From positions 16,306,001 to 16,370,000 of the forward strand of contig NW_026889803.1 of assembly GCF_033153115.1 (NCBI RefSeq): a DNA stretch of 64,000 nucleotides, in the 5' to 3' direction. Origin of the DNA: Saccostrea echinata (taxonomy: Eukaryota). The stretch's first letter is position 1, and every line of letters starts with the position of its first letter. The notes beneath the pieces were generated by a model. It was not told where the DNA came from, did not search any database, and saw only the letters and a list, made by a program, of their open reading frames with translations. The position numbers were made by a program, and so were the translations under genes. Below, piece by piece: positions 5,542 through 56,232 of the stretch.

Positions 5542-7850
5542 ATGACTTTAAACAATTCATAATAAACATCTGAATTATTTTAATTTGTTGGATTTACCTA
5601 TTTCTTGCTGAAGGTATGTCGTATGAAGATTTTCATATAATATATATATGTCTGCAATTTAAGAATTATTAGTTTTCTAGTCAAAGCTGTAATCGTTAAA
5701 TTCTATTGATTCTCCTTCCCTCTGCATTTTCTCAAGCGGACAAAAGCATTAATGCATCTTTAATTTGATATACAAGGAATTTACAGAAATAGAAATAAAA
5801 ATATTACAAATAAGTCTGTAGAATAATTTTTCATGGTTAACAAAAAATAATTCGTTCCAAAATGAGTATCTGCACGGAGAACAGCTAAAGAATTTGTCAT
5901 TCAAGTACGTTTATAGATGTGTTCATTTTTTTTCTAAGTAAATATCTGCATGTGGATTGTTTTGATATTTTAACGGCATATCTTAGTATCCAAATATTTA
6001 CATCCACTGAATATTTAAAGAAAACCATTATTAGTTCGTTTGTTTGTTGTTGTTTAACATTCCTCTCGAGAATTTTTCACTCATATGGAGACGCCACCAC
6101 TTGCCGGTAGAGAGCTACAAATTTTGAACTATACTCGGCACTTAGGGCCATTGAGCAGTGAGGGATCTTTTTCGTGCCAGCACCTACTGCACCTACTGGG
6201 ACCTCGGTTTATACGGTCTCATCCGAAGAAACGGTCACCACGTCCCCCAGTGGGATTCTAACCCGAGACGTAAGACTCTACGACTCTAGAGCAAACGCTC
6301 TAACCACTGCGCAACGCGGGCGACTTATCAGTTTGTAAACAACACTAGGCATATCACCTGTACAGATTTCTTGATCAGTAACTCTTCCTTCAATGAAACA
6401 TACAATGGCGTACATGGACATATCAATGATACAATAACTAATCTTTTTAATCCTACTTTAAATAATTATTTATACAGATATAAATATAAACAATAAAAAA
6501 TGTCTTTCTTTGGTTGTTAGTACGGGAATTAATGTCGCAGCTATTTTACAGAAAAAAATTACATAACCCGCTTGAACATTGATTTTAAGGTAATTCTACA
6601 AGTTCGGAGTGATAATTAGATAAAAAAAAACCAGAATACGTCTATGCAAAAAAATCTAATATTATAGTATTACAATTTTTTAGTTTTAGTGCAGGAGCGA
6701 TTGCTGGCATTGTTTTCAGTTCTGTCGTTTTTTGACTCATCTTAATTCATATGATCATATACTTCTGCAGTCGAAGTAAATTGAAGCAAACAAATGTGTT
6801 GTTCTGCATTATACCACCGCAAACAAGCAAAAGATCGTCACATGTAAGTGTGTATAAGTAACCTCAAATAATTATTTGTTGTGATTTAATTAGGTTCCAT
6901 TTCTTTTGCATAATTGTACATGATATTTATAACAGAATTTATAATTTCATGCTAAATTTAGATTAGGTTTTTTCTTTTACCTGACATCTGCGTAAGGTAG
7001 GGGTTAAAGATACGAAAAATTGAAAGTTTCTTGATAGACGTTAGTCTTTAATAAGACATGTATTCTACAACTTGCAAATTAATATGAAGATATGAAAGTT
7101 TAAAAAAAGATAATCTGCATCTAATCTTGAGTGTCAAATTAGAAGGTTCAAACAGACCTGATTAAAAACTTAAATTAGTTAACATGTTAACTTTATTAGA
7201 AAATAAGCACTGTAAAAAAGGTTGAGCTTTTTTCCATTCCTGTTGTATCTGATTAATATTATTTATAAAAATTCGAATTCTCGTTTCATCAATGATGGCT
7301 GTGAACATATACTAAAGATACTAGTAACTTTCAGAAAACGAGGAATCTAAAATGAGTTCTAATAACGGTTGGAAAAATGTCAACTAAAACAGTGTCCTCG
7401 AAACGAATATTGCCTGAATAAGTTTAAAACAGAATAAACAAAAAAGACCCTGAATTTATCCAGTGACTATTCATATATAATAACCATGATGCAAGTTTTT
7501 AGCATTGTAGATTAAACTGTTTTGATACATGCTTTTCAATTTTACAGCTAATTATATGGCTGGAGTTGCCTACTCTTCAAAGCCCTCGCAAAAATGGCTT
7601 TTCCTGAAGTAAACTTCCCTTCAAAGCTTTATCCACACGGCACACTTTATAATATTGCATTTCAGTATGGAATAGAAGACCCAAACCAGAAGTAAAAATT
7701 ATGATACATTCTCTGGACAACAGTATGACAAAGTTCCATCTTCATACAGACCTACAAACGGCAAGAAAAAAAAAACACAACAAACAAACAAAAACAAAAA
7801 CTTTATCTCCCTACCAAACACAAGGAAACATTACAATATCGAACTTAAAA
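5542..7850 (+). pseudogene. Pseudogene copy 1 (A-type) of the single-pass PY-tail membrane protein family
   Basis: Exon 1 (5542-5613) has a TAA after MTLNNS and ends ...CWIYLFLAEG|gt. The TM exon (6684-6843) reads FSAGAIAGIVFSSVVF then TGA, plus a frameshift. The last exon from 7548 (NYMAGVAYSSKPS...YNIAFQYGIEDPNQK) is frameshifted. Exon 2 was not identified. Confidence 0.85.
6037..6323 (-). mobile_element. tRNA-derived SINE (family A)
   Basis: Reverse complement of the element at 13787-14098 (gtcgcccgcgt head, cttcggatgagaccgtataaaccgaggtcc core, (aaac)n tail). Confidence 0.9.
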
Positions 7851-8266
7851 AAAAATGACATGTACTAAACTACTTCGAAAGCCTTATCAATTTTCACTTG
7901 AAACTCATTTCAAATGCATATTGTGTGTTAAACATAAATTGTGCCATGCATACATGTGCGATTGTGAAATACATGCTCCGTCTGTCCTAAATTGATATGT
8001 ATGGAAATCAGTTGTAAAAGGTTGTATTTTCATTTGAATTTATTATTTTTAAATTCAAATAATTTGTATACTTTATCAAATTTATATTTTTCTATACTTT
8101 TTAGTAAAAAGCAACAATGAGTAAGTGATCATCTGTTTCTTTGTTCATTTTTTCTAAGCGACAAATTGTGTGACCTGGTGTTAATTTATTGACCAGATTC
8201 AATTATATATTTTTTGTATATTTTTAAAATTAATTATTTGTTTATTTGAAATAAAATAAAAGTAAT

Positions 8267-8444
8267 NNNNNNNNNNNNNNNNNNNNNNNNNNNNNNNNNN
8301 NNNNNNNNNNNNNNNNNNNNNNNNNNNNNNNNNNNNNNNNNNNNNNNNNNNNNNNNNNNNNNNNNNNNNNNNNNNNNNNNNNNNNNNNNNNNNNNNNNNN
8401 NNNNNNNNNNNNNNNNNNNNNNNNNNNNNNNNNNNNNNNNNNNN
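8267..8444. other. Assembly gap (178 N)
   Basis: Run of n between gene copies 1 and 2. Confidence 1.
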
Positions 8445-9434
8445 CACCCTATGTATTTATAATTTTTAAAAATACATTTCCGTCACTCATTGTGACAGTA
8501 CAATAAAACGCGTTTCTCTGTGTATATTTTTAAGCGTGACTATACACCAAAAAGGCATTTTGCTTATAATTAGAAGGAACGCATAGCAAACGTAAATTTT
8601 TAAAAAGTAATTTTTTATTCACCTCCTCTTCCTTGCGTTTCTTCTGCTCTGTCTTCCCGGTCCTCCACCGCACATTCTACGTACATCTTCCCCACTCCTG
8701 TCTACTTTGATTTATCCATTGTAAACTGTCCGCACCCAAACGCACTGACAAAAGATATTGACACTGATTTATTAAAGTTTAAAAGTTTCAAGCGCTATTC
8801 CGCAAATGCAAAAAAATTATCGTTATCAGTAAAATAGTTTTACACACCTATAAAAATTGAAAAGGAACAATGAGTATTAAAATCCCATGGACTTGGAGAT
8901 TCTAAAGTTAAATATCTTCCGACTCATAAAAAACGATCATTTTACTTAACAAATAAACAATAGGCCATCAGCATTCAACAAGAATAAATTATTAAGAAAA
9001 TTAAATTTTATAGGCTGTAAATACATGTACCGTCTTCCGTTCTTTTTTTTTTTCTTTTTTTTTTATTTTGTTTTTTTTTTTTTTAATGTTTTAGTCCAGT
9101 AAATTTTTCCATGTTTCAAAATTTTATATTATTTGAAGATATCTTCGATGATATTGGTTATTTCATATTATAAATATTCCAGAATTCATGAGCAGAAGTT
9201 ATGGGTTTTGAACTTTTCACTTAAGATAGAATAGTGAATTAATAAAATGTTGATTCTGATATATATAGAATATTTTGCGATAATTGAATATATATTTTAC
9301 AATAACGTTGTTAATTTGGAAATGATACTCTAAAACAAAAATATGGTATTGCTAAAGCATTCAAGAATATTTCAATTATTTTTTCTCAACAGCCTCGATG
9401 TTATTTAATCTTAAATTACGATAAAAACAACATG

Positions 9435-9496
9435 ATTGCGAAATGCCCAACCTGTACTCTTAGGAATTTTCCATCCGGGTTTGCCTCAGTATAAAG
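9435..9496 (+). promoter_or_regulatory. Proximal promoter of intact copy 2: C/EBP-like + kB-like + ETS-like + TATA
   Basis: attgcgaaat 9435-9444, ggaattttcc 9463-9472, catccgg 9472-9478 (CCGGATG on minus), tataaag 9490-9496, about 115 bp upstream of ATG 9605. Conserved in copies 1 and 4. Confidence 0.55.
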
Positions 9497-9604
9497 GTAC
9501 AGGTATATATATATAAAGACCATTCCGATTTTAGAAGTAATGAGTGTGACACTTGGAAACTCTCTGAATCTGAATTTTAAATCCAGGCCCGAATTAAAAA
9601 GAAG

Positions 9605-9671
9605 ATGGCTTTAAATAATTCATCATACATGTATATGTTAATTTGTTGGATTTGTGTATTTCTTGTTGAAG
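9605..9671 (+). CDS. Copy 2 exon 1: signal peptide MALNNSSYMYMLICWICVFLVE
   Basis: ATG 9605, hydrophobic signal-like peptide, phase-1 donor G|gtatgt, homologous to 5542, 14929 and 35815. Confidence 0.85.
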
Positions 9672-55037: not shown

Positions 55038-55132
55038 ATCTTAGTGTAGTTGACTTGTGTGCTTAGTTATATTGAAATCAGACCCAAACTGTTGAGCGGT
55101 TAAAAGTATTTCAAGGAAAATTTTATATATAT

Positions 55133-55425
55133 ATTGTTTGTTGTTAAACGCCCTTCTCGGGAATTTTTCACTCATATGGTAACGCCACCACTTGCCGGTG
55201 AAGAGCTGCAAATTTTGACCTATACTCGGCACTCAAGGCCATTGAGCAGTGAGGAAACATTTTCGTACCAGCATCTACTGCGACAAGGGACCTCAGTTTA
55301 TACGGCCTCATCCGAAGGAGCGGTCTCCACGTCCCACAGTGGGATTCGAACCCGCGACATAAGGATCAACTCCTTATTCCGCGACTCTAGAGCAGACGCT
55401 CTTCCATTGCGCCACGCGGGCGACA
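55133..55425 (-). mobile_element. SINE family A
   Basis: Reverse complement match to 13787-14098. Confidence 0.9.
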
Positions 55426-55559
55426 TCTTTAAACCAAGAAATTTGTTACACGAATTGCCTTAGATATGTTGGTAATGCACAAAATATGGGAAAAAAATCA
55501 TTGACAGGATTTTTCAGCTCTAGGTCCTGCTTCTCTATAAAAGATTTCCAATGATTTTG

Positions 55560-55918
55560 GATATACATTATAGGGGTTTGCTCGATCGTACCCAAAACAG
55601 AACCTGACCTAGATATTCTTATTATAAATCTGTATACCAAATTTCATTTCAGTATGTGCAACCTCTGCAAAGAAAATGAACGGAAACTGCAAATAATTGT
55701 AATTTTTCTAATTCCAAGGGGCATAACTTTGTCAAAAATTGCTCAGTCATACCCATAACAGAACTTGACCTAAATATCCTTATGATAAATCTGTTTACCA
55801 AATTTCATTTTAGTACGTGCAACCTCTGCGAAGAAAATGAACGGAAACTGTTGGTGGACCGACAGACAGACAGCAGCAAAGCAATATGCCCTCCCTTCTT
55901 CGAAGGGGGGCATAAAAA
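55560..55918. mobile_element. HINE-like element end with two repeat units
   Basis: Duplicated accaaatttcattt.agta.gtgcaacctctgc.aagaaaatgaacggaaactg, then (gaca)n and the hairpin gccctcccttcttcgaaggggggc followed by ataaaaa. Confidence 0.75.
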
Positions 55919-55968
55919 GAGCTGCAAGCTTGAGGCATAGACGCGAGATCGTCATTTTAAATTTACAG

Positions 55969-56232
55969 CAAATATCATTGTGGGGATTCACTACCTAACA
56001 GAGCCTTACAAAGCAAATTCTACCGTCAGCCGAATTTAATCCTCTGCACATCTATATCCATACACTGGTAATTTACTGCCTAATAATATGGATTCCGGAA
56101 CAGAATTGTGATGCCGTTCCTTCGTCATCTTACACACACGACGCACCAGCACACGAATCAGTGGGCGATCCAAGTCGACTGATGACTACAGGAATAGCTG
56201 TCGAACATGACAGATCACCTACCGTATACTAC
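55969..56232 (+). pseudogene. B-type relic: decayed exon 4
   Basis: tttacag|caaatatcattgtggggattcactac (NIIVGIHY versus NRNVGIHY)...aacatgacagatcacctaccgtat, with an early TAA. Confidence 0.8.

What the first reader, a model, noticed from the sequence alone, without database searches (positions are those of the whole stretch)
5542..56232. Hidden tandem family of membrane-tethered micro-ectodomain proteins with PY tails (candidate undescribed system)
Seen: at least 7 co-oriented copies or relics of a 4-exon gene with identical intron phases (1,2,1). Two splice into intact ORFs of 189 and 184 aa with the layout signal peptide - about 20-30 aa ectodomain - TM - CCC(C) - QYNTAFQYG - PPxY. Known: TM + juxtamembrane Cys (palmitoylation) + PPxY (binds WW domains of NEDD4-family E3 ligases) is the layout of the CYYR1/WBP1/VOPP1/Shisa-like superfamily, whose members normally have a Cys-rich ectodomain. 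That domain is absent here. Inference: a lineage-expanded, birth-and-death family of small adaptor or sensor proteins that couples a variable extracellular peptide to ubiquitin-ligase recruitment, possibly in immunity or stress.
Basis: partly seen in the sequence, partly recalled or inferred. Interest (0 to 1): 0.85.

Follow-up and report, generated by a model that had tools for sequence, protein, structure and literature searches.

The report
Oyster tandem array of CYYR1-like genes
The window holds part of a 320-kb tandem array of small, really spliced oyster membrane-protein genes that are divergent, cysteine-poor relatives of the known ubiquitin-ligase adaptor CYYR1.

Summary
The window (Saccostrea echinata, chromosome-scale contig C54) holds two intact 4-exon genes of 189 and 184 aa and five decayed copies. 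All lie on the + strand, and the intact genes have GT-AG introns of phases 1,2,1. Transcript contigs from four public runs show all three junctions of gene 2. They also support the last junction of gene 1, and they show no extra exon.

The assembly gap (8267-8444) lies in AT-rich spacer between a relic and gene 1 and touches no exon.

The array reaches beyond the window: about 19 loci over roughly 320 kb, about half of them broken.

The genes are not hidden. [quoted passage not shown]

Three lines place the family inside the bivalve CYYR1-like group:
- profile-profile comparison gives 99% probability over 125 columns, and reversed controls fail;
- two intron phases are shared with CYYR1-like genes elsewhere in the genome;
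- Pfam CYYR1 hits are consistent but below the cut-off.

The variant feature is a Cys-free, Tyr/Arg/Ser-rich ectodomain stub.

The likely function, by analogy with human CYYR1, is PPxY-mediated recruitment of NEDD4-family ligases. This was not shown here.

The scan has one unchecked note of a CYYR1-like gene on another piece of this genome (s1-820249).

The parts
5577..7850 (+). Relic copy A. Exon-1-like 5577-5612. Exon 3 at 6682-6842 with an in-frame stop and a frameshift. Exon 4 at 7544-7850 in three frames.
   Evidence: tblastn, (E down to 1e-14)
9605..9671 (+). Gene 1 (LOC133171858) exon 1: start codon and signal-peptide core; donor GT, phase 1.
   Evidence: The RefSeq protein P0004 is identical to the spliced model.
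11146..11227 (+). Gene 1 exon 2: Cys-Asp-Ala followed by an Arg/Phe/Tyr/Ser/Gly-rich ectodomain stub; intron phase 2 after it.
   Evidence: The stub is 81% identical in the S. cucullata orthologue.
11411..11565 (+). Gene 1 exon 3: GAIAGIV motif, transmembrane helix, CCC, basic juxtamembrane segment, ending ..QQKINT; phase 1.
   Evidence: RNA loose ends in four runs read its 3' end joined to 12865.
12865..13130 (+). Gene 1 exon 4: cytosolic tail with QYNTAFQYG and PPPY; stop codon at 13128-13130. The 3' UTR continues to about 13853.
   Evidence: Transcript contigs start exactly at 12865 and run to 13853.
14929..14989 (+). Gene 2 (LOC133171834) exon 1: start codon and signal-peptide core.
   Evidence: Joint 14989/16571 is in an X5 contig that starts about 14911.
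16571..16628 (+). Gene 2 exon 2: Cys-Asp-Gly followed by a Tyr-rich stub.
   Evidence: Joints on both sides are seen in RNA contigs.
17974..18134 (+). Gene 2 exon 3: transmembrane helix, CCCC, juxtamembrane segment ending ..QQRIVT.
   Evidence: Joints 16628/17974 and 18134/18491 are seen in four runs.
18491..18765 (+). Gene 2 exon 4: tail with QYNTAFQYG, PPSY, PPPY and a C-terminal PPPY; stop codon at 18763-18765.
20648..20763 (+). Relic D: exon-4 fragment with stops and a frameshift. It may lie inside the long 3' UTR of gene 2 (not verified).
   Evidence: E 0.002. The X5 contig of 2727 nt extends beyond 18799.
35815..44968 (+). Relic E. Exon-1-like 35815-35880. Open exon 3 at 42751-42906 with its donor kept. 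Exon 4 at 44735-44968 with three stops. That these three pieces belong to one copy is assumed.
   Evidence: E 5e-4, 4e-16, 8e-11
52050..52296 (+). Relic F: exon-4 fragment with a stop and a frameshift; it keeps the PAPSYEEVV motif.
   Evidence: E 6e-10
55965..56163 (+). Relic G: exon-4 fragment with a stop; the weakest of the seven.
   Evidence: E 0.08 with gene 2 as query; E 1e-4 with paralogue P0002 as query

Best explanation
The genes encode small type I membrane proteins of a cysteine-poor bivalve branch of the CYYR1-like family, itself part of the Shisa-like/STMC6 group of single-pass PY-motif adaptors.

Domain order:
- Exon 1 plus the first three codons of exon 2 form a signal peptide. 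Cleavage after Cys-Asp-Ala/Gly is inferred from the -3/-1 rule.
- The mature protein exposes only a 20-28 aa Tyr/Arg/Ser/Gly-rich stub.
- It crosses the membrane once.
- It carries 3-4 cysteines at the cytosolic end of the helix; palmitoylation is inferred.
- It ends in a disordered Pro/Tyr-rich tail. One P-x-Y position is invariant across paralogues (PPPY, PPSY or APSY), and many copies have a second PPPY near the C-terminus.

Mechanism. By analogy with human CYYR1, which binds the WW domains of WWP1, WWP2 and ITCH through its PPxY motifs at late endosomes, the tails most likely recruit or activate NEDD4-family HECT ligases on endomembranes. That would steer ubiquitin-dependent sorting of the ligase or of membrane cargo.

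What is shown: gene structure, transcription and splicing, homology, and the tandem birth-and-death array shared across oysters. What is inferred: topology, palmitoylation, WW binding and any cargo.
For: Splicing and ORFs.

Public annotation: gene 1 is NCBI LOC133171858 and gene 2 is LOC133171834. Array member P0007 is named CYYR1-like by NCBI.

Pfam CYYR1 (PF10873) is the recurrent family-specific hit:
- P0007: 22 bits, E 2e-4.
- P0003 (gene 2): E 0.027.
- P0004 (gene 1): E 0.05.
- C. virginica relative P0018: 24 bits over profile positions 26-147.

Profile-profile comparison:
- Against Mytilus-type proteins, two of which pass the Pfam cut-off (P0029 35.4 bits, P0024 31.3 bits): probability 99.2%, E 2e-19, 125 columns from ectodomain to PPxY.
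- Against Cys/Tyr-rich mollusc CYYR1-like proteins: 99.0%, E 3e-18. Reversed-sequence controls scored only 29-32 against 114.

Introns: the introns flanking exon 3 have the same phases (2 and 1) in CYYR1-like exons on C51 and C29, and the position also matches on C51.

Literature on human CYYR1:
- It also has 4 small exons, a signal peptide, a TM and C-terminal PPPY motifs. Its CAG/CAG acceptor adds an Ala before a Gly, which only a phase-1 intron 3 can do (PMC1863428; the phase is my inference).
- It has three conserved Cys in the TM (PMC5578492).
- It binds WWP1/WWP2/ITCH by PPxY (PMC11399591).

Other support: the ESM Atlas nearest cluster is mollusc 'CYYR1-like' (0.89, 173 shared features). 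Every intact member has [P/L/A]PxY in the tail. The genome encodes the partner class, including a four-WW HECT ligase gene.
Against: - Genes 1 and 2 score only 14-15 bits against Pfam CYYR1, where the cut-off is 31 bits.
- The defining CCSYYAY Cys box is absent.
- The sequences are short and low in complexity, so part of any similarity is compositional.
- In most paralogues the conserved motif is APSY, not the canonical PPxY or LPxY. The residues after it (ESV) are conserved too, and WW binding does not require that.
- The one complex prediction gave no verdict (this counts neither for nor against).
- No binding, localisation or expression-condition data exist for any mollusc member that I could find.
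Confidence: 0.6

Rival explanations
1. The proteins belong to the same family, but the tail's main output is tyrosine-based sorting or signalling rather than WW-ligase recruitment. The conserved P-S-Y-E-S-V would act as a YxxV endocytic (AP-2) signal or as a phosphotyrosine/SH2 docking site. The proteins would then be small receptors or co-receptors.
For: In most paralogues the motif reads PAPSYESV, with E-S-V conserved after the Tyr and Ala, not Pro or Leu, at -3. A second conserved Tyr-containing block, QYNTAFQYG, has no known WW role.
Against: Only P-x-Y is invariant. Gene 1 and its orthologue read PPPYNAS and PPSYKST, with no hydrophobic residue at +3. Additional canonical PPPY motifs occur in many copies. 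The homologous human protein works through PPxY-WW binding.
Confidence: 0.2
2. The resemblance to CYYR1 is convergent. These would be lineage-specific low-complexity membrane proteins whose Tyr-rich stub has a structural, adhesive or matrix-related role, and the PY motifs would be incidental in a Pro/Tyr-rich tail.
For: Pfam scores are below the cut-off for the window's genes. Composition is extremely biased, with up to 12 Tyr in 20 residues of ectodomain. Bivalve genomes are rich in fast-evolving low-complexity secreted proteins (general knowledge).
Against: The forward profile match is far above the reversed controls. The alignment to proteins above the Pfam cut-off spans 125 columns. Intron phases are shared. 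The TM and stub are conserved at 81-88% between orthologues, and the P-x-Y column is invariant.
Confidence: 0.1
3. The array is mostly decaying DNA, and the two open genes are transcribed but functionless survivors.
For: Five of the seven copies in the window, and about half of the 19 or so loci in the array, carry stops or frameshifts. RNA alleles show several amino-acid changes.
Against: Orthologues are kept open in S. cucullata, O. edulis, M. gigas and C. virginica. An allelic indel in gene 1 is in frame. Splice sites and phases are conserved.
Confidence: 0.05

Closest known systems
[quoted passage not shown]
   Same: - A small protein (154 aa against 184-189 aa) from a gene of 4 small exons.
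- The same order of parts: signal peptide, short Tyr-rich ectodomain, one TM beginning with a G-x-IAG-IV-type motif, cysteines in or at the TM, and a Pro-rich tail with PPxY.
- Intron 3 is phase 1; for human this is inferred from PMC1863428.

   Different: - No CCSYYAY box and no ectodomain cysteines after the predicted signal cleavage.
- A conserved QYNTAFQYG block and a PAPSYESV-type motif in place of three PPPY motifs.
- Pfam score below the cut-off.
- A tandem multigene array rather than a single gene.
Bivalve 'CYYR1-like' / 'shisa-4' / 'shisa-5-like' RefSeq proteins (for example Mytilus trossulus P0029, Magallana gigas P0017, S. cucullata P0013 and P0019)
   Same: They are direct homologues (hhalign 99%). 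P0029 shares the Cys-free Arg/Tyr/Ser stub, the CC..CCC cluster and QYNT..APPPAY. P0017 and P0013 are orthologues of array member P0007.
   Different: Many of them keep 4-8 ectodomain cysteines (P0019, P0023, P0028, P0043). None has been studied experimentally as far as my searches show.
STMC6 / Shisa-like adaptors (WBP1, WBP1L/OPAL1, VOPP1, TMEM92, Shisa)
   Same: Single-pass proteins with PPxY tails that recruit NEDD4-family ligases (PMC11399591). There are weak Pfam WBP-1 hits (E 0.015-0.6).
   Different: Those families are defined by a 6-8-Cys ectodomain pattern, which is absent here. There was no Shisa_N hit.
Commissureless / PRRG4 and NDFIP1/2
   Same: They work alike: small membrane proteins whose LPxY or PPxY motifs engage Nedd4-type ligases to sort cargo. 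Comm also lacks ectodomain cysteines (PMC5578492). There are weak Pfam Comm hits (E 0.16-0.85).
   Different: There is no evidence of homology. NDFIP has three TMs, and Comm lacks a signal peptide.

Membership tests
CYYR1 (PF10873) | Pfam gathering score (31 bits) reached | tested here: not met
   Gene 1 (P0004) scores 14.4 bits, gene 2 (P0003) 15.3 bits and array member P0007 22.2 bits. The homologues P0029 (35.4 bits) and P0024 (31.3 bits) do pass.
CYYR1 (PF10873) | Central Cys- and Tyr-rich ectodomain with a CCSYYAY box (PMC1863428) | tested here: not met
   The stub is Tyr-rich (5-12 Tyr). It has one Cys, at the predicted signal-peptide cleavage site, and none after it.
CYYR1 (PF10873) | Signal peptide plus a single transmembrane helix (type I) | tested here: met
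   There are two hydrophobic segments: an N-terminal one scoring 1.8-2.0 and a central one scoring 2.5-3.1 on a 19-mer Kyte-Doolittle scale. This is a heuristic only. SignalP and TMHMM were not available.
CYYR1 (PF10873) | Conserved cysteines in or at the transmembrane helix (PMC5578492) | tested here: met
   CCC in gene 1 and CCCC in gene 2 at the cytosolic end of the helix. Two or more adjacent Cys occur there in all nine aligned members, and one Cys column is invariant.
CYYR1 (PF10873) | C-terminal PPxY motifs | tested here: met
   Gene 1 has PPPY at residue 155. Gene 2 has PPSY at 149, PPPY at 163 and PPPY at 179. The P and Y columns are invariant across 9 members.
CYYR1 (PF10873) | Four small exons; intron 3 just before the PY-rich tail | tested here: met
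   Four exons with phases 1,2,1. The exon-3 phases are shared with Pfam-positive CYYR1-like exons on C29 and C51. The human phase 1 is inferred from the CAG/CAG Ala insertion described in PMC1863428.
CYYR1 (PF10873) | Binds WW domains of WWP1/WWP2/ITCH-type ligases | tested here: inconclusive
   A complex prediction of the gene 2 tail with WW2 of the oyster four-WW HECT ligase scored 0.09, which gives no verdict. This needs a bench test.
Shisa-like / STMC6 superfamily | Ectodomain with a conserved 6-8-cysteine pattern (C*C*CC*CC) | tested here: not met
   There are no ectodomain cysteines beyond the one at the signal-peptide end. No Shisa_N hit was found.
Shisa-like / STMC6 superfamily | Short single-pass protein with a Pro-rich PY-motif tail | tested here: met

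The most novel reading that the evidence does not exclude
The array is a diversifying repertoire. Each paralogue's distinct Tyr/Arg-rich ectodomain stub, conserved between orthologues, would recognise a different extracellular or luminal partner, such as a membrane cargo, a matrix component or a microbial ligand. It would couple that partner to NEDD4-family ubiquitination. Rapid gene birth and death would then tune an oyster-specific set of cargo-selective ligase adaptors used in stress or immune responses.
Probability: 0.1. Interest if true: 0.6.

Novelty: new variant of a known kind. Interest (0 to 1): 0.3.

Why it matters
CYYR1 was first described as vertebrate-specific. It only recently gained a function: regulating WWP1 through its PPxY motifs.

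Oysters carry large tandem arrays of divergent CYYR1-like genes. Some of these have lost every ectodomain cysteine but keep the helix, the cysteine cluster and the PY position. That comparison marks which parts of the protein are dispensable and which are not.

The array also offers a natural series of ectodomain variants for asking what the tiny luminal stub does.

For oyster genomics, the result gives about 19 'uncharacterized' loci a family assignment. It also suggests that the RefSeq model of gene 2 starts at an internal Met and lacks the first 16 residues of the signal peptide.

It is not a new kind of system.

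Tried and rejected
- Complex prediction (gene 2 tail residues 45-90 with WW2 of the four-WW HECT ligase, locus L034) scored 0.09 and the controls were not run. This gives no verdict and is not used as evidence.
- The look-up of encoding contigs, tried in order to check synteny in S. 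cucullata, was closed. Synteny there rests only on consecutive LOC numbers and a shared 1.07-Mb contig.
- Pei & Grishin 2012, which defines STMC6 and places CYYR1 in it, is not held. Its content is cited only through PMC11399591 and PMC5578492.
- Paper searches for CYYR1 or 'cysteine and tyrosine-rich' together with oyster or Crassostrea found nothing.
- Exon-wise Pfam scans gave only weak transmembrane-type hits.
- The exon-4 profile found only 11 representatives among 1.84 billion proteins. The tail alone therefore looks oyster-restricted; the wider family only appears with full-length profiles.
- ESM Atlas structure matches were all below TM 0.5 on a model with pLDDT 0.51, and are meaningless.
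- Joined spliced models were never sent to a search tool. Searches used single exons by reference, or database proteins that those searches returned. P0004 is identical to the gene 1 model. P0003 is gene 2 without its first 16 residues.
- The full 184-aa gene 2 model was only translated and scored for hydropathy in local scripts.
- Read laying covered 12800-18799 only, so gene 1's first two junctions have no read evidence.

Full report
**What is in the sequence.**
- Gene 1 (9605-9671, 11146-11227, 11411-11565, 12865-13130) encodes 189 aa.
- Gene 2 (14929-14989, 16571-16628, 17974-18134, 18491-18765) encodes 184 aa.
- All six introns are GT..AG with phases 1,2,1.

Both proteins have the same order of parts:
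- a hydrophobic N-terminus;
- Cys-Asp-Ala/Gly;
- an 18-25 aa Tyr/Arg/Ser/Gly-rich stub;
- a strong hydrophobic helix opening with a G-x-I-(A/G)-G-I motif;
- CCC or CCCC;
- a basic juxtamembrane stretch ending ..QQ-x-I-x-T exactly at intron 3;
- a Pro/Tyr-rich tail with QYNTAFQYG and one (gene 1) or three (gene 2) PPxY motifs.

Translated searches of the window with the exon peptides find five further co-oriented, broken copies:
- 5577-7850;
- 20648-20763;
- 35815/42751-42906/44735-44968;
- 52050-52296;
- 55965-56163.

The weakest, 55965-56163, reaches E 1e-4 only when a closer paralogue is the query. So the count of seven copies or relics holds.

**The assembly gap.** The gap at 8267-8444 sits in AT-rich spacer, 417 nt after the last fragment of the first relic and 1161 nt before gene 1's ATG. 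No exon or frame is claimed across it. Its only consequence is that the spacing, and anything inside it, is unknown.

**Transcription.** Four runs from two studies hold 22-30% of the words of 9500-18900, about the exonic share. I laid them on 12800-18799.
- Their contigs skip 16628/17974 and 18134/18491 in all four runs.
- They skip 14989/16571 in one contig.
- All skips are GT..AG, and the introns have zero depth apart from repeats.
- One 2727-nt contig carries gene 2's four exons contiguously from about 14911, so there is no additional Cys-rich exon.
- For gene 1, contigs begin exactly at 12865. The unaligned letters before them read the end of exon 3, with a 3-nt in-frame indel allele. This supports junction 11565/12865.

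The first two junctions of gene 1 were not covered by reads. They rest on three things: canonical splice sites, identity of the spliced model to RefSeq protein P0004, and collinearity with the S. cucullata orthologue. The runs are labelled 'RNA?' only. That they are transcript assemblies is my inference from the intron-skipping contigs.

**Organism and extent.**
- The window is C54:16,306,001-16,370,000 of a 923-Mb genome.
- The exon-4 profile search returned gene 1 letter for letter as 'uncharacterized protein LOC133171858 [Saccostrea echinata]'.
- Gene 2 is LOC133171834. It is modelled from an internal Met, giving 168 aa.
- Searches of the genome and of 334 kb fetched around the window show the family running from about -9.2 kb to +311 kb in window coordinates, all on the + strand.
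- There are about 19 loci, and about half carry stops or frameshifts.

**What it is.** Searches used single exons by reference, or database proteins returned by those searches. The joined models themselves were not sent to any search tool.

The exon-4 profile finds only 11 representatives among 1.84 billion proteins. Full-length profiles reach 36 mollusc proteins from Saccostrea, Ostrea, Magallana, Crassostrea, Mytilus, Pinctada, Argopecten, Pecten, Sinanodonta and a chiton. These are named CYYR1-like, shisa-4, shisa-5-like or uncharacterized. [quoted passage not shown]

Pfam CYYR1 is the recurring family-specific hit, but it falls below its 31-bit cut-off for the array members (14-22 bits). 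Mytilus-type relatives with the same Cys-free Arg/Tyr/Ser stub do pass it (35.4 and 31.3 bits).

Profile-profile comparison of the array family gives these results:
- against the Mytilus-type relatives, 99.2% probability, E 2e-19, over 125 columns from ectodomain to PPxY;
- against Cys/Tyr-rich mollusc CYYR1-like proteins, 99.0%, E 3e-18 over the pre-TM/TM/juxtamembrane core;
- against reversed-sequence controls, a score of only 29-32 compared with 114.

Gene structure gives independent support. CYYR1-like exons on C51 and C29 (one at 32 bits, over the Pfam cut-off) begin in phase 2 just before the S-G-G-x-IAG motif and end in phase 1, like exon 3 here.

Human CYYR1 is likewise a gene of 4 small exons encoding a signal peptide, a Cys/Tyr-rich box, a TM and three PPPY motifs. 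Its alternative CAG/CAG acceptor adds an Ala before a Gly. Only a phase-1 intron can do that (PMC1863428; the phase is my inference).

The ESM Atlas's nearest cluster is also mollusc CYYR1-like, at 0.89, which is a lead only.

**What differs from CYYR1.** The CCSYYAY box and all ectodomain cysteines are missing. The single Cys lies at -3 of the likely signal-peptide cleavage site, so the mature stub is probably Cys-free; this rests on the -3/-1 rule, not on a predictor. The tail has its own conserved blocks: QYNTAFQYG, and a P-(A/P)-P-x-Y-E-S-V motif in which only P-x-Y is invariant. By the rule that a family's defining features must be met, I call this a divergent variant of the CYYR1-like kind rather than a plain member.

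**Evolution.** A maximum-likelihood tree of 22 proteins resolves well-supported orthologous sub-lineages:
- gene 1 with S. cucullata LOC134282633;
- P0007 with S. cucullata and M. gigas proteins;
- a sub-lineage of S. cucullata LOC134282632, O. edulis and C. virginica proteins, to which I assign the copy just upstream of the window from its 74% exon-4 identity to LOC134282632; that copy itself was not in the tree.

Deeper nodes are unresolved. The array is therefore at least as old as the oyster family, with continuing gene loss, and is not a private expansion of this species.

Between the two Saccostrea species, gene 1's stub and helix are 81-88% identical and its tail 54%. The ectodomain varies between paralogues but is constrained within a lineage.

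**How it most likely works.** Human CYYR1 binds the WW domains of WWP1, WWP2 and ITCH through its PPxY motifs at late endosomes, and it drives WWP1 autoubiquitination and lysosomal loss. The related STMC6 proteins act as ligase adaptors (PMC11399591).

The oyster genome encodes NEDD4-family ligases, including a four-WW HECT gene on the same chromosome. I therefore rate PY-dependent recruitment of such ligases as the most likely function, at about 0.6 for the whole statement. Homology alone I rate at about 0.85.

The main rival is that the conserved Y-E-S-V is a sorting or phosphotyrosine signal. The single complex prediction returned no verdict.

**Verdict.** This is a cysteine-poor, tandemly arrayed bivalve branch of a known adaptor family. 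It is already modelled in RefSeq but, as far as I could find, undescribed in papers.

Noticed in passing
window 47255-51796 (-): Four long ORFs (153-301 aa) have no Pfam hit. ORF 47906-48808 has more than 131 scored copies genome-wide (5448 candidates), and its Atlas features resemble tyrosine-recombinase / DUF3504 proteins. This is probably a Crypton- or DIRS-like transposon inserted between two family relics.
   Followed up: partly
window 13796-13889 (+) and 55331-55421 (-): Two tRNA-Ser(AGA)-like elements were found. The first lies at the end of the gene 1 transcript contigs, which run to about 13853. It attracts RNA-contig depth of 8,000-25,000 and many loose ends, so it behaves as a tRNA-derived SINE, not a tRNA gene.
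   Followed up: partly
window 22624-22698 (+): ARAGORN calls a tRNA-Thr(CGT) in a GC-richer stretch. Whether it is a real gene or a SINE head was not examined.
   Followed up: no
window 14929-14989: RefSeq's model of gene 2 (XP_061162616.1, 168 aa) starts at Met17. A transcript contig reaches 18 nt upstream of the ATG at 14929. The 184-aa protein with a full signal peptide is therefore the likelier product.
   Followed up: partly
window 11540-11565 (end of gene 1 exon 3): RNA contigs in all four runs carry a 3-nt in-frame insertion (one extra codon) relative to the assembly. This is either an allele or a very close paralogue.
   Followed up: no
window 14299-14514: A perfect 111-bp tandem duplication (1.9 copies, 100% identical) lies about 415 bp upstream of gene 2's start codon.
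   Followed up: no
G000:C29:27.67-27.82 Mb (-) (L028, L029, L031) and C51:6,210,184-6,210,372 (L033): There is a second cluster of CYYR1-like genes, one of whose exons is above the Pfam cut-off. A single C51 gene has an exon 3 intermediate between that cluster and the C54 array.
   Followed up: partly
L004:7583-7837 (window coordinates 101583-101837): Array member LOC133204667 (P0001, 220 aa) has an exon 3 enlarged by an insertion of about 35 aa between the Cys cluster and the ..QQRIET end.
   Followed up: no
L034 (G000:C54:63869501-63872500, -): Four WW-domain exons of an ITCH/WWP/Su(dx)-type HECT ligase lie on the same chromosome, 47 Mb from the array. WW3 is split by an intron after its first Trp.
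   Followed up: partly
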